64,000 bases of DNA from the NCBI RefSeq assembly GCF_963676685.1, contig NC_092346.1:62806001-62870000 (forward strand), written 5' to 3'. The position numbers and the translations under genes are program-made. Under the pieces are notes generated by a model, which was not told the DNA's origin, ran no database searches, and saw only the letters and a list, made by a program, of their open reading frames with translations. This document shows, one piece after another, positions 30,901 to 52,100 of the stretch. This DNA comes from Mytilus edulis (lineage: Eukaryota). Positions within the stretch are counted from its first letter, which is position 1. The number at the start of each line of letters is the position of its first letter.

Positions 30901-33900
30901 GAAAAAAATTTAAATGTGATTCAAAATTTATACTGCCTTGATGTTTTAGTCTAATTTATCTATAATCAAGGTTTCTGAACACAAAAATAACCAAATAGAG
31001 GTATACATGGAAATTATCTGAATTATTTTTAAATCTACTTATTACGGGTTAGAAATGAAAAAAATGAAAAGAAAACTGTATAATGATTTTCAGTTAAAGT
31101 TATAATTGGAAGCCACAAAGGTTAGGACATCCTTTTGTTTTTTTTAGGTTTAATTTGGGCTCAGCAACCAAATGGTGAAATATTTACATTCACTCCAACC
31201 AAAAAGAAAATAAGGACAGAGCAGAGGCCTCCAAAAGGCATGTTTGTGTGTATGAGTGTATGTGAGGAGGCTGTATGGGGCCTGAATGAGGATGGGAAGG
31301 TATACATACGTAGCGGCATAGCAGATCACTGTCCTGAGGGTGCCAAGTGGTGTGACCTGGATCTGAAACAATTGGGTATGAGTTTTCTATCTTTTATGAT
31401 CTTATATACCAACCAATGACAAAATAACAAATAATCTACAAAAAACATATTCATATATAGAAAGATTTCAATATTTATACACAATTGAAAAATGGCTTAC
31501 TAGGGTTTTCATGTTTATATAAGTAATGGATTTGAAATCTAGTGACAGAAATCTTCCCCTTGCAATTAGAAATGTTCAATCATTGGAATATTCTTTGTTG
31601 GAACACAGCAGGTAATAAGTGGCGAGATAGCATTCTGGAAAATAGTAATAATAAACAAACTGCTGCAAATACAAAGTTAACATATAATGTTATCATTTCC
31701 CCCTCAGTATAGCAAAGGATGATAATGACAGGTTTTAAAAGTTTTGTATAAAAAAGTCAACATGGTCTGTATGGTTACTATAGTATAGTATACTGATTTG
31801 TTTTGTTATACAGGTGATGCCCATTTAATCCATCTATCTTGTGGCTCTAGGAATGTCTGGGCTATTGACAGTGATGGTGTAGTATACCAAAGGATAGGAG
31901 TAAAGGCCCCTTCCACTCACTCTCTACAGGCTGCTTGGTTACCACCCGTATGAGAATTTTAGAGGGATTCCGCTTAAAATTAGCAGGAACCCAGGCGGAA
32001 TCCGCTTAAAAATCTAGACTTTTAGACGGAATTAAGGCGGACATGGAAAAAAGAAAAAAATCCGTCTAAACTGTTATATACCTTAGGCGAAATGTTAACT
32101 TTTTTCCTGCTGAGTTAACAGGATTTCTGTAGCAACAGATATAACACAGACGGAATGCTGGACTTAGTAAGATTTGTTTCATTTCTAAGGTGGAAATTGT
32201 ACTTAAAAAATTTTTGTTCAATTTTATGAGGCGGAATTTGTACTTAGAAAATTTTGTTTATATTTCTGAGGCGGAATTTGTACTTAGAAAATTTTGTTTG
32301 AATTTCTGAGGCGGAATTTCGGACTTAGAATATTTTTCACTTTTTTCTTATGAAAAATATATTGATTTATTTGTATTTTTGCAAATATATGATTAGAGGG
32401 TGGTGATTATCTGAGCAATATATCCAACATTAGTCAAGTTATCCAACAGATCAGAGATGCACAATCCCAGTATGTGGTTTGTATCAGTGCAACTTAGAAT
32501 CATTTGCAGGCTTTAACATCACATTACCATCATCATGACCCATATATCATACTTAGGCTTTAAAACAGAAATCTGTTGAATAAAATTTATTTGGAGACAA
32601 ATCGATGTATCCTTATACAAATATGAACTACAGAATAAAACAACATTCATGACATGTAACAACTACTAGTTTTATTCTCTTGATTTTCAGAAATCTACAT
32701 TCACAGTACATGCAGTACCACAGTTTGGATTAATTTTTCATCAACATGATTAATACAAATAATATTTTTTCCCTTTACATCAACATGATCAACATGATCA
32801 ATATTTTCTAATTTTAGTTTTGTAGCTATCATAATTTGCATTAAGCACTGTGAAGAAAATATTAGTTTTATGCTTTCTCTTTACACATGCAGGGCATATC
32901 CAGCCATTTTTAAAAAGGAGGTTCCCAACCCAGAGTAAAGGGGCAGGAACTATATGCTCCCATTCAAATGCATTGATTGGCAAAAAAAGAACTTTTACTT
33001 TACTGTTTTTAGAAAAAGGTTACATATGTACATGTATATAAACATTAATGAAATACTTAGAAATATGAAATATTAATCTGATTCCATTTTGTTTGGGAAT
33101 TTGCAAATATATGAATACTGTGCACAATCATATGTAACTAGCATACAAGAAGTAGTTATGTTTTCAATTGGTATTACTTCCAAAAATGCAGTTTTTGAAA
33201 CTCTTAGAATATTGGACTTTGGTGCATAATTTCCACATCTTAGTTTTTCAATAAAAGCCAAATAGTACTGTTGATCATTCTCTACAAGATTAATGAAAAA
33301 CTTGACTTGTCCAAAATTAATTAATCCCCTACATTTGTATTCAATTACTGAGTTGTTCCTCTTTACCATACGAGTATATGACTTTCCATATACAATACAG
33401 TCCTTCAGTTCCAAACGTTTAAAGCATTGAAACTTCATTTGTATAAGCTCATATCCAAAAAAATTATGCAATGCCACATTTTCTGAAGCAGATAGAGTTA
33501 TTTCTTTTATGCCACCTAAAATATAGCCAATGTTTCCAATTTTTTTCATTCGCTTTAAAATGTATGGACATTCCATTGAGTTATAAATTGATTCACAAAC
33601 TGATCCTTTTTCTATGCAGTTCTGTTTTAACTCTGGCAACTTTTGAAGAAAAGATACTCCAGTTACTATTTGGCTATCAATATTCTGAGTACCACGAATC
33701 ATTCTAATTAAGGCACCATTTTTGTCTTCAAAAGAGAAACAACTGTGAGTATATAAAGGACCTAAATTGCGAACACAATCAGCTAAATGTAACAATTGGT
33801 GAATATTTAAGCGCATGTAACATCCATTGTAAAGTCTTGGAAAATTCTTACAAAATTCCAACAAATACATTTCTGCTTCATTTACTTCTTCATCTGTTGA

Positions 33901-36900
33901 TCCATATTTAAGAAGAACATGCATTGCATTTACCAACAATAAATAATGTGACCATCGTTCCTGATCAAGTATTCCATGTAGAACTGGAGCACCATAATAT
34001 AACAGAAAAGATCGGTACTCTGAAGCCTTCCAGTATTTAAGGTCATTCTGTATTGTTCTAGGAAGTCGTGTAATTTCAGTAGTTGGACGTATACTAATAA
34101 GTCTTTCATCAACCTGACACAATTTTTGGAAGAAGTTGAAAGGTTTAGAAGAATGTTTTTGAGCAAACCATAATTCTAATAAAAGTTTCTGTACTCCCAA
34201 AAGTACCCCATGCATATAGTCAATGGCAATACCATTGACAATGTCAAATTCTGGGAAAAAAGACAACCATGATGGACCTTTAATTCCTTTTACTACAGAA
34301 CTTGTTCCATGTGTACCATTCAATGCTTGACGAGCATTTTCAATAACATTGTGAACTGTTCTTTCTGGGCCTTTTGGATTTGCCTCATCAAATGGAAATA
34401 CTCGCGTCTGACCTTTTCCAACTGCTGCAGAAGTGCCTTGTTGTTCACATTTCCAACAGGAGTATGCACCATTATATTGTATATGGTTGCATAATATACT
34501 TCTTGCTGGAAGATCTGCTGTACCACATAACAATATTCCTTTTGATAGAAATGCTCCTCTTTTTGGAGAGAAGCATTCTATGCCATTATACAAATTTTTC
34601 ATTGAATGTTGAAATGGTTTGAGAAAAGTGCCCATTGCTGGTTTCTGACTTCCAAACCATAAGCTTGCCAGTATCATATTCTCTCTTTTCATTCGTAGTT
34701 TATACGGCAGTTCATTTATTACCAAGAAAATAGGCCACACTGAAACTTTACTGCTCTTAAATACTGCTGCTCCATCAGTGTTAAAAGTAAAAGAAATGTT
34801 ATCAGGATTGCTCAAAAGACCATTCTCTTTGTTTAAAGATTTATAAATTTTCCCGTCATAAATATCTTCGTAGGTTCCATCTGGTGTATTACGCATAAAG
34901 CGATGTTGCAATCTTTCATAGAAATTTTCCTGAGAAAACAAATTTTGTATTTGGTTCTGTAATGGTATTTCAAGAAAGTAATTTCCATCATTTTTACTAA
35001 ATGGCTTTTTACAAAATTCATATGGACAATTCTTTAGAGAAGTATTTTCAATGGCTCCTAAACAATGGCCACAGTAGAAGTGTTTTACTAATGGAATACG
35101 CAAATTTGTAAAAAACTTTTTAAACTCATGGAGCTTCGTACACAGATTATGTTCAAATGGTAAAGCAAATGCAATAATGTTCAATAACACTTGTGTTCCT
35201 TCGCTAGACACACCAAAATTTGTTGTAAATAGGGCAAGAAGTAGCATGAAAGCTCCTACTGTTACTGAAGCTCCAGGATAAAGTGGTCGTAAGTCATAGT
35301 CTGAATTCAAATCATCATTCTGATCAAAATTAGTAAATGTATGTTCATCATCATTGGAATCTTCCCAGAGCTCGAAAGGATCTTCTAACTCTATTGTTTC
35401 TTCATAAAGGGATTTAAGAATATCGTCCAGTTCTGGATCATCACTTTTTAAATCTATTTCTGTAGCTTGTTCAAAGGTAATTGCATCAACTTGGTCACAA
35501 TGATCAATAGTACTCTGCAGCTGAAATAAGCAAATACATAAAAATGTACATTTGTTGAGTAATGCACATGTATAAACATATCTTTAAGGTTTACATGCAA
35601 GTTATTTACATTTATGTATGTGCCTGTCCCATTAGTCAGGAGTCTGTAATTCAGTGGTTGTCTTTTGTTTATGTGTTACATGTTTGTTTTTCATTCATTT
35701 TTTTACATAAATAAGGCCGTTAGTTTTCTCGTTTAAATTGTTTTACATTGTTTTATCAGGGCCTTTTATAGCCGACTATGCGGTATGGGCTTTGCTCATT
35801 GTTGAAGTCCGTACGGTTACCTATAGTTGTTAATGTTTGAGTCATTTTGGTCTTTTTTGGATAGTTGTCTCATTGGCAATCATACCAATCTTCTTTTTAT
35901 GTTACATTGTACATTTGTATTAAGCAGTAATACATGTATCTAAAATTTATACACTGTGCAGGTTTAAAAAAGAATTGACACAGCAGGTTTTTTCTTAAAC
36001 AGACCATAATTTTTTACATGTACAAATGTACAGATTATTATGAGATAGTTGTTTTGATTATGAGCTGCAATTTAGTAAAATGCTAAATCACGTTGATGTA
36101 TTGGCCTCAGATGACAACATGATGTAGCGATTACATGATCAATTGAAGGTCATCTATGTGTGATACTCATTCACGTGTTAATCTTTAAATAATCGTGTTT
36201 AAAGTTGCAAAACTTACTTTTTTGTGTTTTTGTTTATTTGCGGAAGTTGAATATTTTTAAAACAATAACGGAGATGTTCCGGAATGCGGAAATATGTTCC
36301 GGATAAAAAAAAATACCAACACTATAATATATAACATGCGACGTATAACCTACCATTGAGGCTTCTGGAGCAGGACTTTCTTTGGATAACAAATTGTTTT
36401 GAATTTCATCCTCAAACACGAAGCTTTGGTTAACTTCCGACTCAAAAATGTAGTTTTCGTGTAACTGTTCAGTTGATTCATTCGATGTTAAATCCAAAGT
36501 AGGGACAGAACCATTAAGAGTCAACACTGGAATCGGAAGTCCATCCTTTTTTATTATTTCTTTTTGTCTGTATGGTCCCCTTTTTCTTTTCTTTTTCATA
36601 TTGTATTCATCGGCCATGTTGAGGAGAAGAGTACTGTGTACAATTGGGGTTGCCAAAGGATGAATTAATTGCTTGTATTTGGAACCATTTTATTTGCTGC
36701 TATGTAGTCCTTTGAATAACTGTATATTTTTGTATACCAACTTTTCCAAGATCGACATATTTAAAGCCAATATTTTGTTCAGAATGGTGTTTTTTTTTTA
36801 ATTATAAAAAATATATTTTGTCATCAGTAAATCAAATTCATTAGACAAATCCGCTCCACAGATTATATTTTATGAAGAAAAATCAAAACTTATAAAAAAA

Positions 36901-39900
36901 TACATGTTCTCAAAGTCAGGGTTTTTTATTTTTAGCCTTCTTAGGTCTTTAATTTAATATTCATATTAAAGTAAGTATATAACGTTTTTTTTTAAATAAA
37001 AATCTGTGATACACTGCATGAGTTGAACCTGTGACGATCCTCATTCCGTTATATCAGTAGCATACGCCAGAGCTTACTGTAATTTGAAACCTCAATGACC
37101 AGTGCCATGCTGAATAGCGTTTCCTGTAATTTGAAACCTGAAAGACCAGTGCCATTTTGAATTTTCATCGCCACACATCATCACAGAACACGTTTTTCGA
37201 AGTAAAAAAATATGTATGCCTGTATTCATTGCGATTTTGACAATACATTGACTGTTCTTGGAAAGCAAAGCAAAAAGTTGAAGTTATTGGGAGAATTCAA
37301 AGTTAAAGAAAAGGTTGAACTGAAATGGTCAAAATCGGAAATCTACACAGGAATAATTGTAAAAATCAACGGTAAGTTACTTGCAATTTTTAACATTGAA
37401 GGAATTTTAATATCTATTCAGCAGTTTTGTTTTAAGAGTTAATATTATTTTTTAAATTGTTTATGTTTTTAAAGGTACGATTTATTGTTTTTTTTTACGA
37501 CTTAAATGTAATTTAAACAGTCACTTAATATTGACTACTATAAAACATGTGGTTATAGTAGTCTCAGTTAATATCAAGGATTTGGTGATAGTAAAACAAT
37601 TATTCGTCTCGGGTAAAAAGGAAACAACCTTTGAGACGTGTTGTACAATTATTTTAAAGTATTTAAAAAGACGTAAGTTCTAAACTTTCTGAAAAAATCG
37701 TTGAACTACCACCCCCCTTTTAATCGGAAAATGTATCCTGATCGCGATCGATGTAGCCTCCCATAAGTTTACTAGACTTTATAATTTGTAATCAGTTCTG
37801 ATATTTAACTTTCCTCGAAATCTGGACCATCCCTGCCAAATAAAAATATTTTATTAAACCTATGCATGTCATCGTGAGTATTTACCCCATGCTTTATGTT
37901 CACGTAAATATTTGTCGATAGATGTCGCTGCTTCGACGTAAACAATATCGTAAATACATGGTTCCCTGTACGAGTCATCGACTATAACGCCTTATATTTA
38001 ACAGATATGCTATTATTCTATAACAGTTTAAAATTTTCATTCATAAAAATCCCAACCGACAAGACGAAAACAAATTGAGATGGCATGCATTTAATCGAGC
38101 TAAGGGTTACAGGGAATTAAAACCTGATGCTTCTTAAAAAATCCAATTAAACGGTAATCAATTATAGTCATGATTTTTCGGATATTTTCTTTTTACATGA
38201 ATATTATGACTTAAAGGAACCGATCACAAGATTTATGTCAAACTACTTTTCTCGGATTTTTTTACAGGGATGAGATGATTTTTTCAACTTTCTGATTTTT
38301 TTAACTTAAGATTTGACTAAATATTCAAGATGTTGATGTTTGTACTGCCACTAGTCCAATTGATAATCTGGTCTTCAGTGACTATTATTGTACATGTATA
38401 TTAAAGTTATTTTGCTTTGACGCCTTACTGATCATGAGCAGACTTAGGCTTATAGAAAAATAATTAAATAGCCTTGCAGCACGTCAATAATATTTAGACT
38501 AATGCTTGCACATGCTTGTCTTTCTTTAGTGGCGGATCCTGATGTTTTCATAAAAGAGGAGGGGATCACTGACGGTATCGGGATCGTTCGCCCTGATTAC
38601 ATATTTGCCCTAGGTTCGTTCACACTGAGTTTGTTCGTCCTGATAGTCCGTTCGCCCTGGGTTCGTTCGCCCTATATTAATTTATGATATGTATATGTTA
38701 CATCAATGAACGAAATATATATATATGTATATATTAAAATTTATGTATATCTATTAAAAGTTAAATACAGAATATTTGCCAAATTTATATTAATAAAATA
38801 AAATTCTTGGCTGCATTGCTACACTTTATTTTATAATTACTTTTAATAACTGTTGATTGAATTTTGATTGCTGATTAGGTGTCATTTTGAAACCTGAGTT
38901 ATCACTGATTGTTAGATAAATTGTCTTTGATGGATTAATATTGAGAATACAGTAACAAATACTTTGTAGTCATTGAATTCACAAAAACTTATCCTTGTAT
39001 AGTCTTTAGTTGTTTTACATTTTCTTCTTGCTCAACAGTTGGACTCATCATGGCCAAAAATGATGAGTCCCTGGACTTGCCACCAAAAATCCTTAGCGAG
39101 AACCATGTTAATGTCGTCAGAACAGTAAAGTGAATTTGCAATTTGAGTTAGAATTTACATTCGGACTTAAAATATTTCGAATGCGATTTACACTATTTGG
39201 GTAATGCAAATTGAATTCAAATTATGTGTGAACGTTGCATGAAACATGTATTCTCACACTTTGATCTTTTAATTAAAATTCTTCACGCATGTACACATCT
39301 ATGCTGCTCAGTAATGAAATCAATTGTTATTTTTTGTAGAATCTCAAGACTTTTTGGATGAATTCGCTATAAAAGCCGTAACAAAGTTTTTGAAGCGTTC
39401 AAAGAGTAAAGACTTGCCAGAGGAAATATACACATACAATCATACGGAACCAGAATTGAATTCAAAACGATGCAGGACAAGCACCAAAAAAATAAATGAA
39501 AGTAAGGAACAAGAGAGTCAATTTAGCCCCAAAAAGCAGAAAAAACATAAAGATGATGATGAACCTAACCAAGAGCCACCCATTGCAGTTACCAAAAAAT
39601 CAAAAAAAAATCTGAAGCAAAATGAAAATGTCAAAGTCACAGATAAAGTATTAAATCCTACAAAGATTAAAGCTAATAAGAAAAAGGCAGAGGAGAATGT
39701 TTCTAAATCTCAGGGCAACCAGATGTTTGGCTTATCAAATTTGGAACTCCAGTTTGGTGATGAGAGTTCCATACATGACGAGACAGTCCTGTCAACATCT
39801 GAAGAAAGAAATAACTTGGAGATATTGCCCTCTAAACCAGCAAGTTCTGCAGACCCTAACTTGACAGCTCCATCTCCAGACAGGAGCAACATATTGCCAT

Positions 39901-42900
39901 CCTCTCCTTCGATACTTGCAGAAAGGAGCCATGCACCCTCCACATCTACACCATCTGCAGACAGGAGCAATACATTGCCATTAACCGCTTCGCTAGACGA
40001 TTATACAAACCAAAGTGCAGGACCTATGCCATCTGCATATGCAGGAAGCACCTTGAAAGGGCCATTGCAGTCAACATCAGCAGAAACATCTTTGACAAGT
40101 ACATGGAAGTTGTGTAAATCACTGTATAATGTGGATAATTCAGAGCAAACATGCTCTAATACAACATTAACAGAAATGAATTTTCCAGGTAATTTATTTA
40201 CATGTATTATCACACTTAAAGTAAAGGCTTAAAAAGAGTACATGTAGTGTACACTGTGAAGAAGTTGATCTTTGAAAAAAATGAAAAAAAAGTTGTACCT
40301 GTACGGTGACCTATAGTTGTTGATTTTTTGTTTCATTTTGGTCTTTGGTGGATAGTTGTCTCATTGGCAATCATACCACATCATCTTTCTTATATATATG
40401 TAGTTAAAAAAACAAGGCCAGTTAACCTATCTACCCTACTTTATATTCTATCCTGAAAGATATTTTTTTGTCATTTTTCATTAAGCATTGTAAAAGTCAG
40501 AATGCGATCAAAGCCTTGGTCAGCTTGAATTGGAGTTGGAATTTATTTACCTCAATTACTTAGGGTGACAATGTACTGGTATATACTTACTACAGTGAAC
40601 TACATGTAGAATGTTAAAAACCTCAAGCACATTTGTTATGTATGAAGCAGAAATAAACTCAAATGGAATTATCTTTTTCTGACCAGTTTTGATATACATG
40701 TACATTGTACTTCAAATTCATCTGTAAATGAACATTTGTTAAGATTAACATATTTCATTGCAATACTTGATGTACACATTTTTTGTATATGGCTATTGAT
40801 AAAAAATACAATTTCATACGATAACTACGTCCCCTTAACTTAACTTAGTTTGACTTTAGTATATATGTCATACATGTATCTGTTAACTTTGAAATAACTG
40901 TATAATTTCAGTGCCATCCCCAGTTGTTCTGGAATTTCTTGAGTTGATAACAAACAAAGAAGTGCAAAACTTTTGCTTAAAACTTAGTCAGCATTACAAG
41001 TTTAAGAAACAAGAGGAAGTAATTACAGAAAGCAGTACAGATAAGGAGGTATGTTTTTGTATACATGTTTCTCTAAGAAATTGAATTACATTTTTTATGA
41101 ATTAACAAGTCATATTCAACAATTGAAATACTGAAAAGTTGATATATTATTGTATAATTGGGAATAACATCACAGATTTTAATTTGATATATATGTCCAG
41201 AAATCTATTTATAGTCATGACAGTAAAATATTGTAGGTTTGAAATCAAAATTTTCCTTTTTATAAGCACAATATAAAAAAGAAAACAATTTTTATGAAAT
41301 CTATGTTACAAAACTAAAAATAATTCCAGAGATCTTAATTGTGAAAAACATCCTGTATTCACTTCTAAATACTTTTAGTATAAATAATAATAAATCCTTA
41401 AATGTCTAAAAACTAATTTCTGGTGACAAAACTTGAAAAAAGTTTCGTAGGAAGATATAAACTGTTTCACGAAAAAGACTTTTATTAATAACATGAATAT
41501 ACATTGTACTTGTTTTTGGCTCTTATTTTCAGTACACTTAAAATTCAGAATTCATTAGAAAAAGGACAGATACATGTATCATCCAAGTATGTCAGTCTAT
41601 AATAATGTTATTTCTCATTGCTTTCCCTATTTTTAAACTATTAACTTATTATTATTATTATTTTTTAGTTTCCTTTAGATGTCATGGAATCTTTGGACTG
41701 TGCTCCTACATACAGTGAGCTCATGCCTCAGAAAAATCAAAGCCTTGGATTGAGGAGATCACCTAGAAAACATGTGTCTAGCTCTGCTTCCTTCACTGGT
41801 AATAGCACTTGTCAACCCTACTACCAAACCAGTGAAGAATGTACTAGTACATGTACTCAAAAACCAACTGAGAAATTTTCTGCAACTAAAGACTTAAATC
41901 AGTACCAAGAAGCACCCATCCAACAGATTCAGATGTCACCTTTTCCCTGTCCGTCTCCTCTGAATTCTCAACATCAATCTCCTAACATTCAGAGTTCAAC
42001 ATTTTCCAGCCAACATTTTCCGTCTCCTCTGAATTCTCAACATCAACCTCCTAACATTCAGAGTTCAACATTTTCCAGCCAACATTTTCCGTCTCCTCTG
42101 AATTCTCATCATCAACCTCCTAACATTCAGAGTTTAACATTTTCCAGTCAACAGAGTCCGTCTCCTCTGAATTCTCAACATCAACCTCCTAACATTCAGA
42201 GTTCAACATTTTCCAGTCACCAGAGTCCGTCTTATCTGAATTCTCAACATCAACCTCCTAACATTCAGGGTTCAACATTTTCCAGTCACCAGAGTCCGTC
42301 TCCTCTGAATTCTCAACATCAACCTCCTAACATTCAGAGTTCAACATTTTCCAGTCACCAGAGTCCGTCTCCTCTGAATTCTCAACATCAACCTCCTAAC
42401 ATTCAGAGTTCAACATTTTCCAGTCACCAGAGTCCGTCTCCTCTGAATTCTCCATCGCAACATGTTATGCAGTCACATGATAGTGATCAATCTGATGACA
42501 ATAAGGTAAAAATTATTATATTTTCAAGAGTAAAAAAATGCCTGAGTTTTCAAGTTAATTATGCTTCTAACAATTATGAAGAATTTTATGTCTTAGATTG
42601 TTAGTGTTATTTTTAGATATAAGAAGGATGCAAAATTAATAAACACTGGGTTTCTCATGGATTGTATAATGTGTTTAGGGACTATAACATCATAATTGGT
42701 TCACGAGTAAAATGTTTCTTTTTAGTGTTAAAGGGTAAACAATCCTCATTTCATGTATTCCGCCAGATAATATACTGTAAATTCAGAAATTATTGCGTGC
42801 ATTTATTATTGCGATTTTGTCATTTTACACTTGAATGCGATTTTAATTTTTACGATTTTGAGAAAAGTCATGCTTAAGTCAGTTCAAATATTACAAAATG

Positions 42901-45900
42901 CGAGTTTTAATTATTGCGTTTACAACTCAGTCGCATTATTCGCAATAATAAAAACCTCGCAATAATTTCTGAATTTACAGTACATGATTTTAAGGAAGAT
43001 ATCTTTTTGACATAAATTTAAGAGCATCTCTAACACTCAAACACGTACATGTTCACAAGCTAATATACATACATCATAAAAATGCAAACAAAGCAACTTA
43101 ATGAATGTACTTATATTTTTCAACAGTTGGATATAAGAATATTTTGTCTGACAGAACCTTGACATTAGACACCAGCCGTTTATCTTAAAAGGAAAAAGGG
43201 GGGAGGAAGTTTAAAAGTAATTCAGCATAGACTCTAATTTTTATTAATTTTATAACCGGATGATAAATACATCTTTTTTATTTTTCCAGATGGTTAAGTT
43301 ACTGCAGACATCAGATGTACAAGTGAGGCGGGGTAGTTTAAGAAAGGCCAATACCAATGCAAGTAAAGGTGCAACTCAAAAATCATCTTTTAAGCTGGCT
43401 AGTTCATTGCTGCCCCTGTTATTCTCTGTTGATGAACTTGCAAATTCATGTGGACAAGGTTTAAAGAAGAAAGCCAATGATGTCAGAACTCCTTTGGATC
43501 CTGTTAGAATTGGAGTCTTAAAAGGTAAGGTTTTGTATTTCTTTATATTTTGATTATTTAATATATATATGCACACCTAAAAAGCCCATAGTATAAATGT
43601 AATGGGTAGGATCTTAATCTGGTACAGGTTTATAATCAATGTGAACTATTTTCAGATCAATAGCTAAGCCAAAAGCCAAGATTTTCTTTAATTTAACAAT
43701 TCCATATATAAAGCATTGACTGAGTGAAATTCTTGAACTTAAATGTAACATATGTTAATAGTTTAAAAAGTGAAATTGACTTGTTGTTACTGTATTTTTA
43801 GTAAAACATGGAGTCAAAATCAGCTCTAAAGATAGGGAATTCAAGTCAATAATATGTCAAAATAATAAAGAAAAATACCAAATATTTATTGATAATATTT
43901 ACATTTGACCAAATTAAATCAACCAATAAAGGGATGCTCAGGAAAAAATATCTGACCTACTTATGCAGCTCACAATTTACCTGTATAACATAGACGAATT
44001 TGGTAAATTTATTTTAATTTAATCCATTATGCATGGTAATTTTAATTTATGTCTTCTTTTTTTTCAGATTATGTTACTGCTTGGTGTGCAAAACACAACA
44101 GATGCATGCAAGATTGCCAGATCAATGATGCCGTTACAGAGCAAGTCAGCTATGCCCGAAAAAAAATAAAAAAATTGTGAACTTTCTTTATATCTGAAGA
44201 ACACTGGAAAAACATAAAAATGTGACTTATAAATGAATAGGAAGAAATTGTGAAGGACTAAGATTGTCAATATTTTACATATGTACATTGTAGTAAATTA
44301 TAGTTCAAATACAGTTGGCCAGGTTTGATAACATTTTTGGTATTTAATTTGTATGAGCCCTAGATATTCTTTGCAAGAATGCATAGAAATGGTAAAAACC
44401 TCAATCTGTAGAAAGAAAAATTTCTTTCTTTGAAGGCAGATTTTTTCCCCCTTTTCTTAAGGCTGATTTTTTTTCATATTCTAAGGCGGAATTTATTTCT
44501 AATTCTTTAGGCGGAATTTTTGCCACTTTGAAAGGCGGATATATTTTCCGTCTATTTAGGCGGACATATTTTCCCTCTCTTTAGGCGGATATATTTTTGT
44601 GAAATATTTTTCCTTTTAATAAGGCGGAATTTTTTCCCCCCTAAGACAGGCGGATAAATTAGCATATTTCGGCTCTATTCCGCCTGGAACCCGCCTGGAA
44701 TCCATGTAAGAAAGATTCTTCGTGTAAAGGGTGACTTTAAAGGGATTCCCTCTAAAAAACCCGTCTAAAACCCGTCTAAAATACGCCTGGATTTTTTCGT
44801 ACAGGCAGTAGACTCAGGGCCATCAGGAACCACATTTATACAAGTCTTCACTGGACCTTCAGACCTTAATGTATGTAATCTGGTATTTTATAATTGTAAT
44901 ATCTGATAGAAAAGCCTATGTTTTAGTCATAATAACCCCAAAAATTAATTTCAATAAGCACAAGTACCAACTCTAGTCTTGAACTGTTCTCAAATGTGCT
45001 TCTCAAATAAGTGTTTGACATTTAAAGTATAAGTAATATTTTATCTAAAGTATTAATAGTTCATAGTTCAAAAAATATTGGTGTCAAGGAGCTCCTTTTA
45101 GGATATTTGATATTTAAAAAATGGGGGGAAAAGGCTGACAAGTCTTTTATCTTATATTTGCATTGATATTACATGTATTTGGGTCTGAAATTGAAAGAAA
45201 AGAAATCTAGATTTTGCTTAAATTTTGATAAGTGACCCCTTAATGAAGTCTTATATGAAAAGAAAAATGGGTTTTAGGGGGCAAAATATTTTACTGTGTA
45301 TTAATATTCACTGTGTATCATCGTACAGCGGATATAGGTACTAACCAAGCGGGCATGATAGATTTTGAACTGACACGGTAATGAAAATCTTTGTTTTATT
45401 TTATCAACATTCAGTGTACATTTCTCAACATCTGAAATTCCTGCTCCAAAATAATTTTCGCATCGATTTTTTACTTTTATATTCTAATAAGAACAATTAA
45501 CTTGTAAATGCGCAAATAGTTGCGAATGTCAACACCAACTTTCAATTTTGATACAATTGTCAAGACATTTACATGTTTTACCTTAAAGAAAGCTAATACA
45601 GGTCAAAAGTAATAGTAACCAATCATAAACCTACCTGTGATTACTCATTCCTTGAAACTTTTTGGGTAATAAACGAACATGAAATTTTTTTTTGTGTACG
45701 GTGTACCGCAACTTAACTATGCACCATAGGGCTTCCAAAACGGTCATATATTCCGGTCATTTGTATAATGTCCGGTAAAAGTCCGGCTGGGCAAAGCATG
45801 AAACGGTCATATACTTTTTATTTTTCAAGGCTTTTTCGGTCATTTTTACATAATTCACGATCTTTTTGACCCAACCTTTTGGCTTTAACATCAACACGTT

Positions 45901-48900
45901 TCCGGTCATAAATGTGACATGATGATTAATCACTATCAAAACAACACCTACTTCAATACTTTCTAATTTTAATCAAGGCTAATTAGTAGTTAGACAGCTG
46001 AAATCTACCTGTTCAGGTGACAGGTGAACTATGATCAGTACCGGACATCGTATAAATTGATCGGTTTAATCACAAATATTTTCTTACATTTCAGTGGTTT
46101 GTATCTAATTGATTTCGTTCTAAAGATTAAAATTATTAGAAATTAGTTTATCAAAATGATTTGATGAAAAATTTTAAGGTTTTAAATAAAAAATCGTCAA
46201 AACTATGTCGTATGAACTAGAACACGTGTGCGCATGTGCACAGGTGGGAAATTTAATAATGCATCCTACATTTCTTCAAAAATGCTAAAATTATCAATGA
46301 TACCTGTATCTAACGTTCAATTCAAGTATTTTGTTGAAGAAATAACGTGGAAAGAGCTTCTTCTCTCAGTCGTGCTTTGTAAAAATACACGGATTTTACG
46401 TATCCGTTTATGGTCCATGTTTTACCATTGTCAAGTCAACATCCGGTTGAAAACGAAAGTAGTTTTTGACAATGTCATTTTGCACAAATAAAAAGTCTAT
46501 GGCAGATATGAGCACGCTGATGTGCACACTTTGAATGATGCACTGCCAATTTAACAGTAACATCCTAACATCAAATTCATATCATATCAAAGTAAAGTTT
46601 AAAATCGTTTTTTTTTTTAATGTAATGTCAATCATTGGAATGGCCATCTGATTACCATAATTGCCTTTTGTGACTAAGTCTTAAGGGATTAAAATCGGGA
46701 TCAGATATGAAATGTCCGGCTGGCTCAAATATTTTTTGGAAGCCCTGCTGACCATACAGAAGGATTTGTGTGGTCAGCTAAACACCGTACACAACGCTTC
46801 TTTTCGAAAAAAAATATCGAAAAAAACATATGCATGAAAGATTTCAATGTCAATTATTGATATAACTATACTTATTACACACGCATAGTGGCCTATTATC
46901 AGAAAAAGAGTTGCAATGAATATAGAATTATATCGGGTGAGACGAGAGCCAACTTCTTTGACAAGTATTTGCACATGTTTTTAGTAATCATTCTTGTTTT
47001 GGGAAAATAATGAGACATCTCTAATCATTAACCTATGACCAAATCATTTCTTAAAACAACAATTATGTTTAGATTGAGGTACACATTGATATTATGTGCA
47101 CAAAACAAAGATTTTCGTTACCGTGTGAGGTCAAAATTGATCACTCCCGCTTGGTTAGTACCTATATCCGCTTTACTGATGATACAAGTTGATATTGAAC
47201 AGTTGTAACAATTTGAATAAATTATTAAAAAAAAATTAAAAAATTATAATATAACTAGTGTCTGATTCTGTTGTCATTACTAAATCTCATAAATAATAAA
47301 ACTTGTTGTGCTGTAATGTGTGTTTAATTGATAGGTATGGGCTATAGATAACAGAAGGCAGACTTATGTCAGGATTGGTATAACAGATGACATGCCTATC
47401 GGAACAGAATGGATTCACATCCCTGGTAAGTTCATAGCACAATAGTCAATACACAATTTTTTTGCATTCATCATTACTGCAATTAAAAACAATTTAGAAT
47501 ATGTTTTTGTCCTGGTTATTACCAAATTCCTTCATGCTTGATTCTAGATCAAGCTTAATGAAATTGCTGTCAATCGCTGTAAAATATATGGCCCTATATC
47601 TGGAAAACAAAAATTTCACAGCATGTAAATGTTAGATTTATTGCTTAGATGTGTATATTATAATGGAGTACTTATACTTGATATTGTTGTCATATTAGCT
47701 TCCATTTCTTTCATATTTTCTAGCCAAAAATGAGATAGCTCTGCTTTACTGCCATGATTAAGAGATTTCGGATTTAAACATTGTTGAAATGTCAAGTTAC
47801 CTGATTTGGTGTGTTTATTGTTAGGAGTATTGCTAGAGTGTTTTTATATTTGGTTTGTTGTTGCATTAGCATTCTTGAGTTTTAATATCCAGAAGAAAAT
47901 GATAAAAATGTACCTTTGATATATGTGGTGAAATAAAGGATTTAGCGAGATTTTTTTCTCAAACAAAAATAATTTCAAATCAACTTGTATACTGCATTCA
48001 GTGAATTTGATGTCCTGTAAGAACTATACATAGACTATTTCAATCTGTTCTTGATCTCTTTTTAATTTTAGATTTTCAAAACTTTGATTTATTAATGAAT
48101 GTTAATATCTGATGTAATTAATTTTCAGGCATTCAAGCACAAGAGCTTGCCATAAGCAATACATTTCTGTGGGCCTTGGACCCAAATGGAGAAGTACTTT
48201 GTCGTCATAATATAACTAAAGATAATCCAGGGGGAGACTACTGGAGAAAGATTCCTGGAATATTTCTCCACATCTCATGTAAGTATCTCATATATCAAGC
48301 TAACAAATATTTCTAATAATGAATATTTGCCCAGATCTTATGTAGTTCTATCATATATCAAAATAACATTTATTTCTAAATTGTCAAAATCTCATAATAT
48401 TACTTCCTATATCTATAGAACATTACTTTCTAAAAAGAAAAATTTGTCAAGATCTTATAGTATTAGTTTCTATATCTATAGAACACATTCATTACCTTCT
48501 TATCAGGAATATTTTTTCATGCCAAATGGGACTGTCAGATATCAATACAAAAATTGATAGAAACGAATCAAGACAAATTACATGTGTATGTACCGGTAAG
48601 CAACTACCAGTCACTGTAAGTCCTTAAACAATGTGTCAAACTCACACTGTATAGACACCTACAAAAGGTCTTGACATGTCAACATGTAAATTGTTTTCAA
48701 AAGTTATAGTAAAGGAAGTCATCGTATACATCAGATTTTAAATTTCCATATGCCCTTATACTTCAATAACATTAACAAAAGTATCCAAATATTTGCACCA
48801 CCTTCAATTGTCAGTCCCCACACACATTTAATCGAGCTTTTTTGAGACATTATAAAAGCATTCTTTAGTTAGTAATACAAATAGGCCTAATTGTGAACTA

Positions 48901-49113
48901 TTGAAAAATTGCACAGAGGCTCAGTTTTTCATTTAAAATAATATACACTGTATTTCAGGTTCTGTAAATGACCAGTTGTGGGCAATAGGCCGTGAAGGAC
49001 AGATTTTCTGTAGAAAAACAAGATATCTATTACGTAAAGATTCGCCACAGGATGCTCAAAAAGGCAGAAAATCATCAAATTTATCCATCAGTGAAGACTG
49101 GGAATTAGTGTAA
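15954..49113 (+). CDS. TECPR2: Tectonin beta-propeller repeat-containing protein 2 (~1575 aa if the transposon is spliced out)
   Basis: GT-AG exons with consistent phases: 15954-16199, 16980-17108, 19038-19169, 20915-21078, 22131-22564, 23115-23720, 24188-25733, 26028-26246, 28829-28964, 29706-29907, 30418-30507, 31148-31375, 31814-31947, 44805-44870, 47335-47425, 48129-48278, 48959-49113. N-terminal WD40 region (GKFGAVFIPGLCK..LYACRPGLRIW), disordered middle, TECPR repeats (VWAID..YVRIGITDDMPIGTEWIHIPG) and terminal LIR EDWELV. Confidence 0.93.
17895..18052. mobile_element. Short MITE (hAT-like termini)
   Basis: Inverted termini cccgtagccagg / cctggctacggg; flanking direct repeat caact, extendable to caactcata. 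Confidence 0.7.
18108..18447. repeat. Minisatellite, 55-bp unit with shorter 43-bp variants, ~7 copies
   Basis: The unit tattttactccgagccaggttaaacaggcttacattcactaataagattagaaca starts at 18201, 18256 and 18311; shortened units follow at 18358 and 18401. Confidence 0.9.
19188..19510 (+). mobile_element. Internally deleted HINE related to the 27132-28436 element
   Basis: Shares ccatcactt, aaaaatcttctcctctgaaactactg and the 3' tgagcga..caggctct hairpin. Confidence 0.65.
21534..22061. mobile_element. Degenerate MITE, Kolobok-like ends
   Basis: Imperfect inverted termini aaaggggtagatctgttaagggctgattttggcc / ggccaagaagggcttttactgggcctactccttt. Confidence 0.55.
27132..28436 (+). mobile_element. 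HINE with (gtc)n microsatellite and two ~507-bp core repeats
   Basis: Start tttttagctcacctggcccgaagggccaagtgagc; cgtcgtcgtccgtc tract; core repeat starting at 27244 and 27751; end aggtgagcgacacaggctctttagagcctctagt. Confidence 0.85.
31960..32340. repeat. Left subterminal repeat array of the CACTA element
   Basis: AGGCGGAATTT core in ~40-bp tandem units (32228, 32268, 32308, with degenerate copies at ~32148 and ~32187) plus dispersed copies in both orientations. Confidence 0.9.
33073..36617 (-). CDS. CACTA/EnSpm-type DDE transposase, 2 exons (36617-36354, 35520-33073), ~903 aa
   Basis: Donor ATG|GTAGGT and acceptor TTATTTCAG|CTG join in frame with no stops. Motifs: basic NLS KKKRKR, CGHC..CPYEFC zinc finger, FNTDG..SVWP..INELP, TADLPAR, IDYMH, WKASE, NIHQLLH..GPL..SCFSFE. 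Confidence 0.93.
35612..35905 (+). mobile_element. SINE-like host repeat in the transposase intron
   Basis: gtgcctgtccca..tcaggag..gtaattcagtggttgtc...gttgtctcattggcaatcatacca. Related pieces lie at 40295-40390, 60840-61160, 62320-62460 and, inverted, at ~21396-21445. Confidence 0.75.
36618..37211. promoter_or_regulatory. Putative bidirectional promoter of the transposon
   Basis: 594 bp between the divergent ATGs. Contains a 32-bp direct repeat (37077-37108, 37124-37155) whose second copy runs into a YY1-like GCCATTTT. Confidence 0.55.
37212..44180 (+). CDS. Transposon accessory gene encoding a C-terminal BEN-domain protein, 6 exons, ~776 aa
   Basis: Phase-consistent GT-AG exons 37212-37371, 39340-40188, 40912-41048, 41669-42505, 43290-43524 and 44068-44180. 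The C-terminus LASSLLPLLFSVDELANSCGQG..PLDPVRIGVLKDYV..INDAVTEQVSYARKK fits the BEN pattern (LFs.EELa.S..G..LDp..i..ik). Confidence 0.85.
41951..42451 (+). repeat. Coding minisatellite, 69 bp x ~7.3
   Basis: Encodes 23-aa units of PSPLNSQHQPPNIQSSTFSSHQS within the BEN gene exon. Confidence 0.95.
42775..42980. mobile_element. Tc1/mariner-type MITE nested in a BEN-gene intron
   Basis: Perfect 23-bp TIR ctgtaaattcagaaattattgcg with a TA duplication on both sides. Confidence 0.9.
44430..44790. repeat. Right subterminal repeat array of the CACTA element
   Basis: AGGCGGA at ~44485, 44509, 44533, 44559, 44583, 44622 and 44648 (~24-25-bp spacing), followed by inverted ccgcct/ccgtct copies. Confidence 0.9.
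45314..47186. mobile_element. 1.87-kb non-autonomous DNA transposon with ~85-bp TIRs
   Basis: tgtatcatcgtacagcggatataggtactaaccaagcggg...cacggtaatgaaaatctttgtttt is inverted at 47101-47186; no long ORF inside. Confidence 0.8.
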
Positions 49114-52100
49114 AAGATTAACTTTGAATGAAATTAAACTTTTTTTTCATAGACATAATACACTTAATTTCAAAATTTTTGTGGAAGAGCTCATATTATG
49201 AATTGAGAGGTTCTAAATTTAGAAGGAATACATTTTTATGAAGAACTTGTTCAGATATGTTGATAATGTAATGACTAACGGGTATAAGGTAATTTTTCTA
49301 GCTTTTTCTAGTCATTTGAATAAGTAAAATAAAAAAAATAGGGTTGTAAAAAATAGAACTGCCAGCATTTATTACTGGACAAGAATCAATACCATGACCT
49401 GTATTTTATGCAGAACCCAAATGTGATTATAAATCAGGCTATAGAAAACTTTTTGGAAAAAAGTTGAAACTATTTTTGTTCAGGAATATTTATGAAAAAG
49501 TGAATTTCTGATGATAACAGTACAGTGTTTTACATCAATAACACTTTAGGTTAAAACAGTATTATATTTCTTTTTTATTCATTTTTTTCCATAATTTCTA
49601 TAGTGTCTATAAATCTACTCAGCATATAACATATAATTATCATTCCATCATTATTTTTTTTAAACTAAAAGATATATCTTTTTAATTTATTTTTTCTTTA
49701 AATCTCTTTTGGGAATACTTTTTCACTATTTAATATATTATTTGTTATAAAAGTTATAAAAACTTGGAAAATCTTGTTTTCCATAAATTATAGAAGTTAT
49801 CAAAACTTGGAAAATCTTGTTTTCCATAAATTATGCTTATACTTATTATATTTATTTGTTTATTGATCATGTTGATGCTTCAGAGTTTGATATGAATACA
49901 ATTTTAGAAAATAATACATTTTCTGCAAATGTTTGTGTTTTCATCGTGTACTTGACCATTCGTATTGTCAACTTTTTTCAATCATAAGATATTTATTTTT
50001 TGTACAACAAATCCTTTTGTCATGAAACTTTGTTTACTTAAGTTGGTGATAGGTATTTTTCAAGACTGGTGTAAAGCTTTAATACTATTTTGTTGGCTTT
50101 GGTGCTATCCTATAGTGTGCTATGTGATTAAGTGTAGTAGCTTACATTTTGCATGTGAAATTAAAATATGACCAAACATATTACTGGGTGCACACTGAAT
50201 AAAGCGCACAGCGGGTTATTTAACAGTGTGCACCACATTTTTTATGTTATTTCGAATAGACAGAACAAATACTTATAATTTAATTCTAAATTCCATTTTA
50301 AATCGGCGTAAATCAAGAAAAAACGTTGATGACGTCATGATCACATGACAAAATTGTGTCTATGATATGATAAACAAAATGATGTCAGCCAATCAGAAGA
50401 CGTGTTACATCCAAAATTAAATTATAATGTTTTATCTTCCTATTAGATACTTATTACTAATTCATATCAGATAAACATATTGTATGAAGGCTATTGTTTC
50501 CTTAGCCTAAAAATTGATGACTTTGCTCAAGTTTCATCTCTTACTTTTGTACTTTTATTTTGGAAAACAGATTTAAAGATCATGGCTGTTTAGCACTTGG
50601 TCAGATATATTTTAAATTCAGTTTCAGAACTTTCTGGGTAATATTTCAAAAGCCTATACTTAAATGTTGTAATTAACAACATTGGAAACAGTTAATATCA
50701 AACCATTTGTGTAACATTGATTTTGAATTGCAACAAGATTAGTAAGTTTTTTTGTTGGTGTATAAGTACTGTTTCATTTTAACATGAAGCTTCTTGGCTG
50801 CCATTTCAACCAGTTCAGAATGTGAACTCTCTTCCTTATCTGATTTTGTTGATCTTTATAACAAATTAAAAAAAATCAATAGTCTAGCTATACAATAAAA
50901 AAAAACATTGCATAAAGCATGTATCTGGTGTATAAAATTAATCATTTTAGACACCCATAGGTGATGCTTAATTTTGTAAAATGGAACAAGTTGTTCCTAG
51001 CTATAGGTTTCACTGTTTATAAATGATATGTACCAGCTAGCATATTTCTGGTTATTTGCCATACATATTGAGATAATATGCCTTCAAATTATGCATATGA
51101 CATTTTTAACCATATTTGTTTGAAAAAAATACAGACATGTATTTTCTGTTTTTAATATGCTCAACCTAATTAATAGGGGCCTTTATGTTTTCCTGTCTGT
51201 GCATCCTTCTGTCCGTCCATTTGTCTATCCCATTTCAGGTTTTAAATTTTTGGTTCAGGTAGTTGAACATTAAGTTGTGCTCACTTTATCTGGAAACTTA
51301 AGTGCATGTTCTGGGTAATACATGTATGTTCATTGTCATGTGAATATTTTAAATGATGTGTTGATTTACACTTGACCCTAATACAGGGTTCACTGAAAAT
51401 CGAAACTTTAAAATGTGAGAGGAGCATATTCTGTAGACTCATATTCTTGCTTTTTTATTGACTTGCATCGTCTTTCTTGCAGAACATTGTTATATACAAG
51501 CAAATTAAATTTAAATAGATTGTATTTTTAAAATAAACTGTGATATATTAAATGTTTGTGATTTTTTGACCAAAAAAAATTAGCTTTTTGAAATATAGTT
51601 TGCAGTAGATGAAGTAAAAAGGTATTTAAAAATGTTTCTTTTTTATTTTATGGTTACTCCACTGAACTTGGGGGTAAATCTTGTAATAGTCCAGCATGCT
51701 TATAGTTTCATGTGAACTGTGTTTATTTTGTTAATTATGTTTATTTTGTTAATAAATTTGTGAACTTGATTTCAGTCTTAGAATAGAGCAGATTAAGGCA
51801 TATACATGTAATTATAAACCTAAATATAAACAGTGAATTGAAAAGATTTTTTTTTTGTTTCAAGTTGCTGACATCAGTACAGGAAAGCTATATCATGGCA
51901 ACTCTCAGAAAATATGAAGAAAAAATGTTTCAGTATCTTTGATTGTAGAGATTTCTTGTGTGCCAACAAGTTTTCAATAGCTAGTTGTTTTTCATAAAAC
52001 TTTTTGGGAAATATTTTTTTATATACAATCCATTCTATAAGTCAACTTAATCCTGATTCCCTTTCAGTTGTGAATAAGTCAGTTGTTAGTTATTTGATAA

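What the first reader, a model, noticed from the sequence alone, without database searches (positions are those of the whole stretch)
44794..44808. TIR mismatches fall on the bases that create the splice sites
The left TIR is CCCGTATGAGAA and the right TIR (reverse complement) is CCTGTACGAAAA. All three mismatches favour splicing in the + orientation. Position 3 (A at 44803) creates the AG acceptor, where a perfect TIR would read CGGG. Position 7 gives GTAT rather than GTAC at the donor, with C on the acceptor side. Position 10 gives a continuous T6 tract. The reverse orientation offers no terminal AG. Either the family has built-in asymmetric ends, or a compensatory mutation after insertion rescued the host gene. 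A second AG 4 nt downstream (44807-08), formed by the TSD plus host G, would shift the frame if used.
Basis: partly seen in the sequence, partly recalled or inferred. Interest (0 to 1): 0.8.

Follow-up and report, generated by a model that had tools for sequence, protein, structure and literature searches.

The report
Transposon ends that mimic splice sites
A very young 12.9-kb cut-and-paste transposon sits inside a coding exon of a mussel gene, and its two slightly unequal ends look like intron borders as an inherited family trait, but no evidence was found that the cell splices it out.

Summary
The sequence observation is correct. The element spans 31945-44805. Its left end is CCCGTATGAGAA and its right end is TTTTCGTACAGG, with three mismatches at TIR positions 3, 7 and 10, a 2-bp CA target duplication and a second AG at 44807-08.

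The asymmetry is inherited, not a local rescue. A second copy 235 kb away, outside any exon, differs at 0 of 12,861 bases. Genome-wide, 23 of 24 family right ends read CAGG and 27 of 32 left ends have C at position 3. A second family, with 58-60% transposase identity, has CCCGTAC...GTACAGG and 54 of 54 CAGG right ends. This refutes the compensatory-mutation and sequencing-error readings.

Only position 3 matters for splicing; positions 7 and 10 are neutral.

GT(31948)...AG(44804) splicing would leave 6 nt (Pro-Ala) in frame inside a conserved WLP|VD motif of a TECPR2-like protein. It is unproven and looks inefficient. The donor matches 5 of 9 consensus positions. At least ten acceptor-like AGs lie in the last 450 nt. 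A sense-strand gene with AATAAA signals sits inside the element.

Public RNA contigs and the RefSeq protein of this assembly show only the uninterrupted junction.

The closest precedent is maize En/Spm, whose termini carry splice sites. This scan had already noted both copies of the element.

The parts
31814..31944 (+). Left part of the interrupted host coding exon (TECPR2-like; ...AAWLP)
   Evidence: Open frame from GAT at 31816. It matches residues 1378-1421 of P0175 at 100%. Weak Hyd_WA/Tectonin hits.
31943..31944 (.). Target-site duplication, left copy (CA)
   Evidence: Read directly. A 2-bp TSD is seen in 11 of 19 end pairs of the family.
31945..44805 (+). 12,861-bp autonomous CMC/EnSpm-like DNA transposon
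   Evidence: Ends defined by other copies. An identical second copy lies at C3:63072632-63085492.
31945..31956 (+). Left terminus CCCGTATGAGAA, with a candidate 5' splice site CCC|GT at 31947/31948
   Evidence: Family-wide counts. The donor matches 5 of 9 consensus positions.
33073..35310 (-). Transposase ORF (745 aa), antisense to the host gene
   Evidence: PF02992 Transposase_21, E=4.5e-16. Only two intact copies in the genome.
37206..44200 (+). Region of the sense-strand accessory gene (weakly BEN-like), with AATAAA at 43864, 43925 and 44165
Evidence: Open frames and AATAAA sites. BEN PF10523 E=0.059, below the cut-off.
44440..44660 (+). Right subterminal repeats (..TTTAG|GCGGA..), each a pyrimidine-rich acceptor-like site
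44794..44805 (+). Right terminus TTTTCGTACAGG, with T6 at 44792-97 and a candidate 3' splice site CAG|G (AG at 44803-04)
   Evidence: CAGG in 24 of 26 copies and 23 of 24.
44806..44807 (.). Target-site duplication, right copy (CA)
44807..44808 (+). Second AG (TSD A plus host G). Its use would give CCC|TAG, an immediate stop.
44808..44870 (+). Right part of the interrupted exon (VDSGPSGTTFIQVFTGPSDLN)
   Evidence: Matches residues 1422-1443 of P0175 at 100%. RNA joint 44870>47335.
47335..47424 (+). Next host exon
   Evidence: RNA joints in X15, X17 and X23.
48129..48278 (+). Host exon
   Evidence: RNA joints. Hyd_WA E=1.5e-10.
48959..49110 (+). Last coding exon, ending ..EDWELV*

Best explanation
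A very recent insertion of a still-active, Transposase_21-type (CMC/EnSpm-like) cut-and-paste transposon has split a coding exon of the Mytilus edulis TECPR2-like gene, inside the conserved WLP|VD motif.

The unequal ends (left CCCGTA..., right ...TACAGG) are an inherited trait of this family and of at least one sister family. They are not a mutation that arose at this locus.

In the orientation found here the ends read as a weak 5' splice site (CCC|GTATGAG) and a consensus-like 3' splice site (T6CGTACAG|G). If the spliceosome used them, every sense insertion of the family would leave CCC + G + the 2-bp duplication = 6 nt in frame (here Pro-Ala).

Shown: the anatomy, the family-wide and cross-family asymmetry, the youth of the insertion, and the uninterrupted exon in orthologues and in public RNA.

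Inferred: that the ends can act as splice sites at all. My estimate is about 0.3 that a measurable share of transcripts from the insertion allele is spliced exactly at 31947/44805. I put about 0.15-0.2 on the asymmetry having been selected for that purpose rather than for distinguishing the two ends during transposition.

The more likely fate of this allele is a hypomorph or null, through mis-splicing into the subterminal acceptors or the internal sense gene, or through early polyadenylation.
For: Ends and TSD.

Sister copy with 0 of 12,861 differences and different flanks.

Family 1:
- Right ends CAGG in 24 of 26.
- All 21 exact pattern matches, and 23 of 24 family-type ends, are CAGG.
- Left ends have C at position 3 in 27 of 32 and GT at positions 4-5 in 30 of 32.

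Family 2 (C8:4853323-4869294; transposase 58-60% identical):
- Left end CCCGTACGAAAT, right end GTTCGTACAGG, TSD AA/AA.
- 54 of 54 right ends are CAGG.

Metagenome relatives: the transposase-proximal end is ..TTTCGTACGGG in 10 of 12 recognised ends, from 17 loci examined.

Transposase: PF02992, E=4.5e-16.

Host gene:
- Tectonin/Hyd_WA hits.
- Ten of ten long orthologues have WLP followed directly by V/I/L-D/E/Q.
- They are named TECPR2-like in bivalves.

Frame arithmetic comes from direct reading.
Against: There is no RNA evidence for the GT...AG junction.
- In the joint 44870>47335, the RNA contigs of X15 and X17 match for exactly 65 letters (44806-44870). That is what the empty site predicts; 66 letters are expected for the spliced form.
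- X23 raw RNA shows almost no depth over 43597-44778.
- These runs therefore seem to come from animals without the insertion, so the test is silent rather than negative.

The RefSeq protein of this very assembly (P0175) joins residue 1421 (31942-44) to residue 1422 (44808-10) with no Pro-Ala, and only one isoform is listed.

The donor matches only 5 of 9 consensus positions, against 7-8 for three RNA-validated host donors.

At least ten AGs with equal or richer pyrimidine tracts lie at 44356-44709.

The element carries a sense-strand gene and three AATAAA signals upstream of the terminal AG.

Only 1 of 19 family copies sits in a host coding exon, so no orientation test was possible.

One metagenome relative (L089) has CAGG at the transposase-proximal end.
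Confidence: 0.6

Rival explanations
1. The splice-site likeness is a coincidence. The C/T difference at TIR position 3 is kept because the transposition machinery treats the two ends differently, and the insertion allele is simply a young, probably heterozygous, loss-of-function or hypomorphic allele that selection has not yet removed.
For: - Zero differences from the sister copy show the insertion is very young.
- The whole terminal 12-14 nt is conserved, not just the GT and AG.
- The donor is weak, many rival acceptors lie nearby, and there are internal AATAAA signals.
- Annotation and RNA show only the empty-site junction.
- A distant family (39% identity) has CCCTTATGAAAA at the transposase-proximal end, without GT.
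Against: The GT, the T-tract, the CAG|G and the 6-nt in-frame remainder all fall together in one orientation, and they recur in a second family. That is somewhat more than a single dinucleotide coincidence. No test separates the two readings.
Confidence: 0.5
2. A point mutation after insertion (G to A at 44803) created the acceptor and rescued the host gene at this locus only.
For: None found.
Against: - The sister copy at C3:63072632-63085492, in non-coding flanks, is identical at every base, including this A.
- CAGG is the family norm and the norm of a second family.
Confidence: 0.01
3. The A at 44803 is a sequencing or assembly error.
For: The table of differing letters hid 297 rows, so the base was not directly confirmed in reads.
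Against: - The same base is in the second copy, in 23 of 24 family ends and in 54 of 54 family-2 ends.
- The best-supported rows list no difference at 44803.
Confidence: 0.01
4. The element is removed from the mRNA by a spliceosome-independent route set off by pairing of the inverted ends ('SOS splicing', described for Tc1, Tc3, Tc4 and HSMAR2), so the GT and AG are irrelevant.
For: - The first and last 200 nt can pair: -90.9 kcal/mol against -61.2 +/- 6.7 for 200 shuffles, none of which reached it.
- Zhao et al. 2025 (PMC12779559; abstract and found passages read) report excision in or near the inverted repeats, rarely at GU-AG, leaving short indels, in worm and human cells.
Against: - No junctions of that kind were seen here. 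The only junction seen equals the empty site.
- The pairing is imperfect.
- The pathway has not been shown in molluscs, and I did not search for its factors.
Confidence: 0.1

Closest known systems
Maize En/Spm (dSpm) termini acting as splice sites (Menssen et al. 1990, EMBO J 9:3051). I saw the title only, in the reference lists of PMC4219821 and PMC8195511; the paper itself is not held.
   Same: Same transposase superfamily (Transposase_21/tnp2). A cut-and-paste element in a coding region whose ends carry donor and acceptor motifs, so that the element can behave as a new intron.
   Different: - The host is an animal.
- The termini are CCCGTA/TACAGG rather than CACTA.
- The TSD is 2 bp.
- This is the full 12.9-kb autonomous element with a sense-strand gene, not a short deletion derivative.
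- Splicing has not been shown here.
- Details of the maize junctions are recalled, not read.
Introners: transposons that create introns on insertion (Gozashti et al. 2022, PMC9860276; 2025, PMC12130899; abstracts and found passages read).
   Same: A TIR element with a TSD whose ends supply splice signals. An aquatic host, which matches the reported enrichment in aquatic organisms.
   Different: - Introners are defined by many near-identical introns in genes. Here 1 of 19 copies is in a host coding exon.
- Removal would be imprecise (+6 nt).
- The main texts of both papers do not contain the words CACTA or EnSpm.
- 'mollus' is absent from the 2022 text and occurs once in the 2025 text, in a passage on substitution rates.
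- The supplements, which may list families and hosts, were not opened.
Removal of Tc1 from C. elegans mRNAs, and SOS splicing (Zhao et al. 2025, PMC12779559; abstract and passages read). Rushforth & Anderson 1996 is recalled only.
   Same: An exonic DNA transposon in an animal gene, with the idea that excision at the RNA level buffers the damage. The authors themselves speculate that transposons may evolve spliceosomal sites in their inverted repeats.
   Different: SOS splicing is reported as mostly non-GU-AG and driven by pairing of the inverted repeats. The reading here is a fixed GT...AG pair with one predicted product. No RNA evidence here.
Soybean TgmR*, a 13-kb CACTA element removed with intron 2 of the R MYB gene (PMC4219821; passages read).
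   Same: A CACTA-type element of about 13 kb transcribed within a host gene and removed by splicing.
   Different: It sits in an existing intron and leaves with that intron. Its own ends are not the splice sites.

Membership tests
CMC / EnSpm (CACTA) superfamily of DNA transposons | Transposase of the tnp2 / Transposase_21 type | tested here: met
   PF02992 E=4.5e-16, 59.1 bits against a cut-off of 28.6, residues 147-301 of the 745-aa ORF.
CMC / EnSpm (CACTA) superfamily of DNA transposons | Termini beginning CACTA / ending TAGTG | tested here: not met
   The termini are CCCGTATGAG... and ...CGTACAGG. So it is CACTA-like by transposase, not by terminus.
CMC / EnSpm (CACTA) superfamily of DNA transposons | Short (2-3 bp) target-site duplication (range recalled) | tested here: met
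   Identical 2-bp flanks in 11 of 19 end pairs, where chance is 1 in 16. The window copy has CA/CA.
CMC / EnSpm (CACTA) superfamily of DNA transposons | Subterminal repeated motifs and a second gene | tested here: inconclusive
   GGCGGA-type repeats are visible at both ends. The sense-strand open frames give only a weak BEN hit, E=0.059.
Introners | Many related copies that are themselves introns of protein-coding genes | tested here: not met
   Of 19 paired copies, only the window copy lies in a host coding exon. One more lies in a LINE reverse-transcriptase frame. Copies of family 2 could not be fetched.
Introners | RNA evidence that the element is spliced out at or next to its ends | tested here: inconclusive
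   The laid RNA runs show the empty-site junction and seem to lack the insertion. No carrier RNA was available.
Introners | Element carries or co-opts GT and AG at its borders | tested here: met
   CCC|GT at 31947/48 and AG|G at 44804/05, family-wide. This is sequence level only.
Substrates of SOS splicing | Base-pairing of the inverted ends in the transcript | tested here: inconclusive
   The predicted duplex of the ends is -90.9 kcal/mol against -61.2 +/- 6.7 for shuffles. This is a prediction only.
Substrates of SOS splicing | Heterogeneous, mostly non-GU-AG junctions in or near the inverted repeats | not testable with these tools
   It needs cDNA of a carrier.
TECPR2 orthologue (host gene) | N-terminal WD40-like propeller, long disordered middle, C-terminal tectonin repeats, W-E-L-V end (architecture recalled) | tested here: met
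   Pfam hits, the C-terminus ..EDWELV*, 100% match to XP_071163849.1 'tectonin beta-propeller repeat-containing protein 2-like [Mytilus edulis]'.

The most novel reading that the evidence does not exclude
A clade of animal CMC/EnSpm-like transposons carries a hard-wired, orientation-specific self-intronising design.
- A conserved C/T asymmetry at TIR position 3 makes the right end a CAG|G acceptor.
- Both ends keep GT at positions 4-5.
- The fixed remainder, CCC + G + a 2-bp duplication, is always 6 nt.

Sense-oriented exonic insertions would then be in-frame two-codon hypomorphs rather than nulls. With its 1.16-kb derivatives (at least 54 copies), such a family would be an early-stage introner in a bivalve.
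Probability: 0.15. Interest if true: 0.7.

Novelty: new member of a known kind. Interest (0 to 1): 0.4.

Why it matters
If the ends do work as splice sites, this would be an animal counterpart of the maize En/Spm case and a possible starting point for transposon-made introns in a mollusc, a group in which the introner surveys I read report none in their main text. It would also explain how an active 12.9-kb element can land in a conserved autophagy-related gene without destroying it.

What the evidence supports is more modest but still useful.
- The asymmetry of the ends is a stable trait of two families.
- The insertion is very young and absent from other Mytilus gene models.
- The public gene model of this assembly bridges the element with a junction that no canonical intron can give. 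That model reflects the empty allele rather than this haplotype.

Tried and rejected
- **Haplotig with the empty site.** A search of the assembly with window 31100-31944 found only the window itself.
- **Orientation bias of exonic insertions.** Only one host-exon case among 19 pairs, so no test was possible.
- **Distal ends of relatives.** The 39%-identity family (C5 and C10 copies) gave one clear end and no inverted partner. Metagenome contigs were too short for the distal ends.
- **Ends of the 71-72% relatives L057-L060.** Their flanks are shared between loci, so the boundary is not an element end.
- **Short Mytilus protein fragments carrying the junction.** A search with a 196-aa part of P0175 returned only three distant proteins. 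The Logan and ENA fragments in the P0163 cluster do not cover the junction.
- **Pfam on the open frames around the L005/L036 copy.** Nothing significant.
- **Literature.**
  - Searches: 'introner + transposon + metazoa'; 'introner / terminal inverted repeat / target site duplication / splice site'; 'CACTA / spliced / exon / dSpm'; 'Menssen / dSpm / novel intron / A2 gene'; 'Rushforth / Tc1 / splicing removes'.
  - None of the listings showed a paper on splice-like ends of a bivalve transposon. This covers the held library only, and supplements were not opened.
It describes a cGAS-like gene cut by a CACTA-like element. It was not followed up; my end patterns had no match near that place.
Full report
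**What is there.** The window is AT-rich animal DNA, about 31% G+C. It lies at C3:62806001-62870000 of a 1.37-Gb assembly. CCCGTATGAGAA lies at 31945-31956 on the + strand. The reverse complement of TTTTCGTACAGG lies at 44794-44805. Each occurs once in the window. Between them lie 12,861 bases. These include a 745-aa open frame on the - strand (33073-35310) that matches Pfam Transposase_21 at E=4.5e-16. Both ends are flanked by CA. GGCGGA-type motifs are repeated inside both ends.

**The host gene.**
- On the + strand the element splits an open frame that reads ...VYQRIGVKAPSTHSLQAAWLP | VDSGPSGTTFIQVFTGPSDLN.
- The surrounding exons carry Tectonin and Hyd_WA repeats, a WD40-like N-terminus and a C-terminus ..EDWELV*.
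- A whole-library HMMER search with the large exon gave long relatives. In ten of ten of those checked, WLP is followed directly by V/I/L and then D/E/Q.
- These relatives are named tectonin beta-propeller repeat-containing protein 2-like in scallop, oyster and freshwater mussel.
- Nine of nine Mytilus proteins from the two clusters that I checked (M. edulis, M. galloprovincialis, M. trossulus, M. coruscus, M. californianus) read AAWLPVDSG without interruption.

The insertion is therefore inside a conserved motif of a TECPR2-like gene.

**Is the asymmetry local or inherited?** A search of the window's own genome with 300 bases of each end found a second full copy at C3:63072632-63085492 and about twenty shorter copies (around 3.2 kb, around 85% identical at the ends).
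- The second full copy has different, non-coding-looking flanks. It differs from the window copy at 0 of 12,861 positions.
- In the tabulated ends, 24 of 26 right ends finish CAGG; one finishes CGGG and one GAGG.
- A genome-wide pattern count gave 32 matches. All 21 exact ones have A at the variable place. Of the 24 that have the family's end, 23 read CAGG and one GAGG. Eight others end ..CATACCAT and are a different kind of end.
- For the left end, 27 of 32 matches have C at position 3 and 30 of 32 have GT at positions 4-5. Four have T at position 3.
- Identical 2-bp flanks occur in 11 of 19 end pairs.

The A at 44803 is therefore a family trait. A rescue mutation at this locus is excluded by the identical sister copy, and a sequencing error is very unlikely.

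**A second family.** The transposase has only two intact copies in the genome, but many more distant relatives. The nearest is on C8, at 58-60% amino-acid identity.
- Its ends can be read: left CCCGTACGAAAT at 4853323, right ...GTTCGTACAGG ending at 4869294, with AA on both sides.
- Its right-end motif has 54 matches in the genome, and all 54 read CAGG.
- Most of these belong to derivatives of about 1.16 kb.
- In metagenome contigs with 46-55% relatives, the transposase-proximal end is ...TTTCGTACGGG in 10 of 12 recognised ends, from 17 loci examined. Several of these are the same family.
- One contig (L089) has CAGG at that end, and one hit (L088) may be chance. The distal ends lie outside those contigs.
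- A 39% relative has CCCTTATGAAAA, without GT.

The C/T asymmetry at position 3 is therefore conserved across at least two Mytilus families.

**What the three mismatches do.**
- Position 3 makes the AG.
- Position 7 puts T rather than C at donor +4, and G rather than A at acceptor -6.
- Position 10 puts T rather than C into the tract.

The last two do not change splice-site quality in any clear way, so 'all three favour splicing' overstates the case. The GT is present at both ends, so it does not depend on a mismatch.

**Would it be spliced?** The arithmetic is attractive. CCC + G + the 2-bp duplication leaves 6 nt, here Pro-Ala between WLP and VD, and this would hold for any sense insertion of the family. 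Using the second AG (44807-08) would place TAG directly after CCC. The motif strengths are less attractive.
- The terminal donor matches 5 of 9 positions of MAG|GTRAGT. Three host donors validated by RNA match 7, 8 and 8.
- At least ten AGs at 44356-44709, mostly in the subterminal TTTAG|GCGGA repeats, have pyrimidine tracts equal to or richer than that of the terminal AG.
- The element also carries + strand open frames and AATAAA at 43864, 43925 and 44165, upstream of the terminal AG. One of these frames is weakly BEN-like (E=0.059).

A host transcript would have to pass all of these before reaching the terminal AG.

**RNA and annotation.** One run search and one read-laying run were allowed. 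I laid window 43400-49300 with one DNA-type run (X1) and three RNA runs (X15, X17, X23).
- RNA confirms the host introns 44870>47335, 47424>48128 (cut +1) and 48278>48959, all GT..AG. This reveals an exon at 47335-47424.
- In the first joint, the contigs of X15 and X17 match the reference for exactly 65 letters on the short side, that is 44806-44870. An uninterrupted exon predicts 65 letters, and splicing at 44804/44805 predicts 66.
- X23 has almost no depth over 43597-44778.
- The RNA therefore appears to come from animals, or alleles, without the insertion. It confirms the exon but does not test splicing of the element.
- X1 contigs cover 43400-44717 with 0-1 differences. No row for 44803 was listed, but 297 rows were hidden.
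- The RefSeq protein XP_071163849.1 (P0175) sits on a contig of 107,021,180 bases, the length of C3. It matches the window's exons at 100% around the site. It joins residue 1421 (CCA, 31942-44) to residue 1422 (GTA, 44808-10) with nothing between.
- Given the CA duplication, an intron producing that join would begin and end CA..GG, AC..GC or CC..CA, none of them canonical. I infer that the model was built from empty-allele transcripts. No isoform with Pro-Ala is listed.

**A rival route.** Zhao et al. 2025 (PMC12779559; abstract and passages read) describe spliceosome-independent excision of exonic DNA transposons. It is triggered by pairing of the inverted ends and occurs mostly at non-GU-AG sites. 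The authors also speculate that transposons may evolve spliceosomal sites in their inverted repeats. The first and last 200 nt of this element are predicted to pair at -90.9 kcal/mol, against -61.2 +/- 6.7 for 200 shuffles. That route cannot be excluded, but nothing here shows it.

**Comparison with what is known.**
- The closest precedent is maize En/Spm, of the same transposase superfamily, reported to contain splice sites at its termini that turn a dSpm into a novel intron. I saw only the title (Menssen et al. 1990) in two reference lists; the paper is not held.
- Introner surveys report intron-making transposons in only two animal groups. Their main texts do not mention CACTA or EnSpm, and molluscs appear only once, in a passage of the 2025 paper on substitution rates. 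I did not open their supplements.
- This family does not meet the introner definition, because only 1 of 19 copies is in a host coding exon.

**Verdict.** The built-in asymmetry is real and is conserved in two families. The locus-specific rescue is refuted. The splicing function is an open and rather uncertain inference.

Noticed in passing
G000:C3:63072632-63085492 (L062, L063): The second copy of the element is identical at all 12,861 bases. It lies 235 kb downstream on the same chromosome, and its flanking dinucleotides differ (TA on the left, CA on the right). This looks like a local hop. The unequal duplication is unexplained.
   Followed up: partly
G000:C8:4853323-4869294 (L068, L069): A sister element of about 16 kb with a 58-60% identical transposase (in two pieces), ends CCCGTACGAAAT / GTTCGTACAGG and TSD AA. 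At least 54 right ends of this type occur in the genome, mostly on derivatives of about 1.16 kb that look like MITEs.
   Followed up: partly
window 31942-31944 joined to 44808-44810: The public RefSeq protein of this assembly (XP_071163849.1) bridges the transposon exactly at the empty site. No canonical intron can produce that junction, so the model seems to describe the other allele rather than this haplotype.
   Followed up: partly
window 45000-47300: The host intron after the split exon is full of very high-copy repeats. Summed contig depth reaches about 21,800 in X1, against about 14 in the unique parts. These repeats are also present in the RNA runs.
   Followed up: no
G000:C7:85081975, 85838217, 86320262, 87296643, 88150199, 89312213 (L027-L030): The first 59 bases of the element's left end recur six times on C7 with identical flanks, spaced about 0.5-1.2 Mb apart. 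A fragment appears to be caught in a large repeated unit.
   Followed up: no
G000:C10:50377070-50380283 (L009, L037): A 3.2-kb family copy sits, in sense orientation, inside a long reverse-transcriptase open frame of a LINE-like element (at least 499 + 89 codons open through the site).
   Followed up: partly
eight places, e.g. G000:C2:58932368, C5:67600674, C9:39363583: Eight loci share the subterminal CGCCTGGATTTTTTCATAC but continue ..CAT instead of ..AGG. They may be a different subfamily end or a shared truncation.
   Followed up: no
window 31945-32144 and 44606-44805: The two ends can form a long imperfect duplex (-90.9 kcal/mol, with 0 of 200 shuffles as low). The inverted symmetry therefore extends far beyond the 12-bp termini.
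   Followed up: partly
window 47335-47424: A 90-nt host exon (VWAIDNRRQTYVRIGITDDMPIGTEWIHIP) falls below the 50-aa cut-off used in the window-wide open-frame list. It was revealed by RNA joints.
   Followed up: yes
window 44868-44870: An Asn/Tyr polymorphism (..SDLN against ..SDLY) among Mytilus TECPR2 proteins at the last codon of the split exon. The window allele has Asn, as do the RefSeq M. edulis protein and two M. galloprovincialis models.
   Followed up: no
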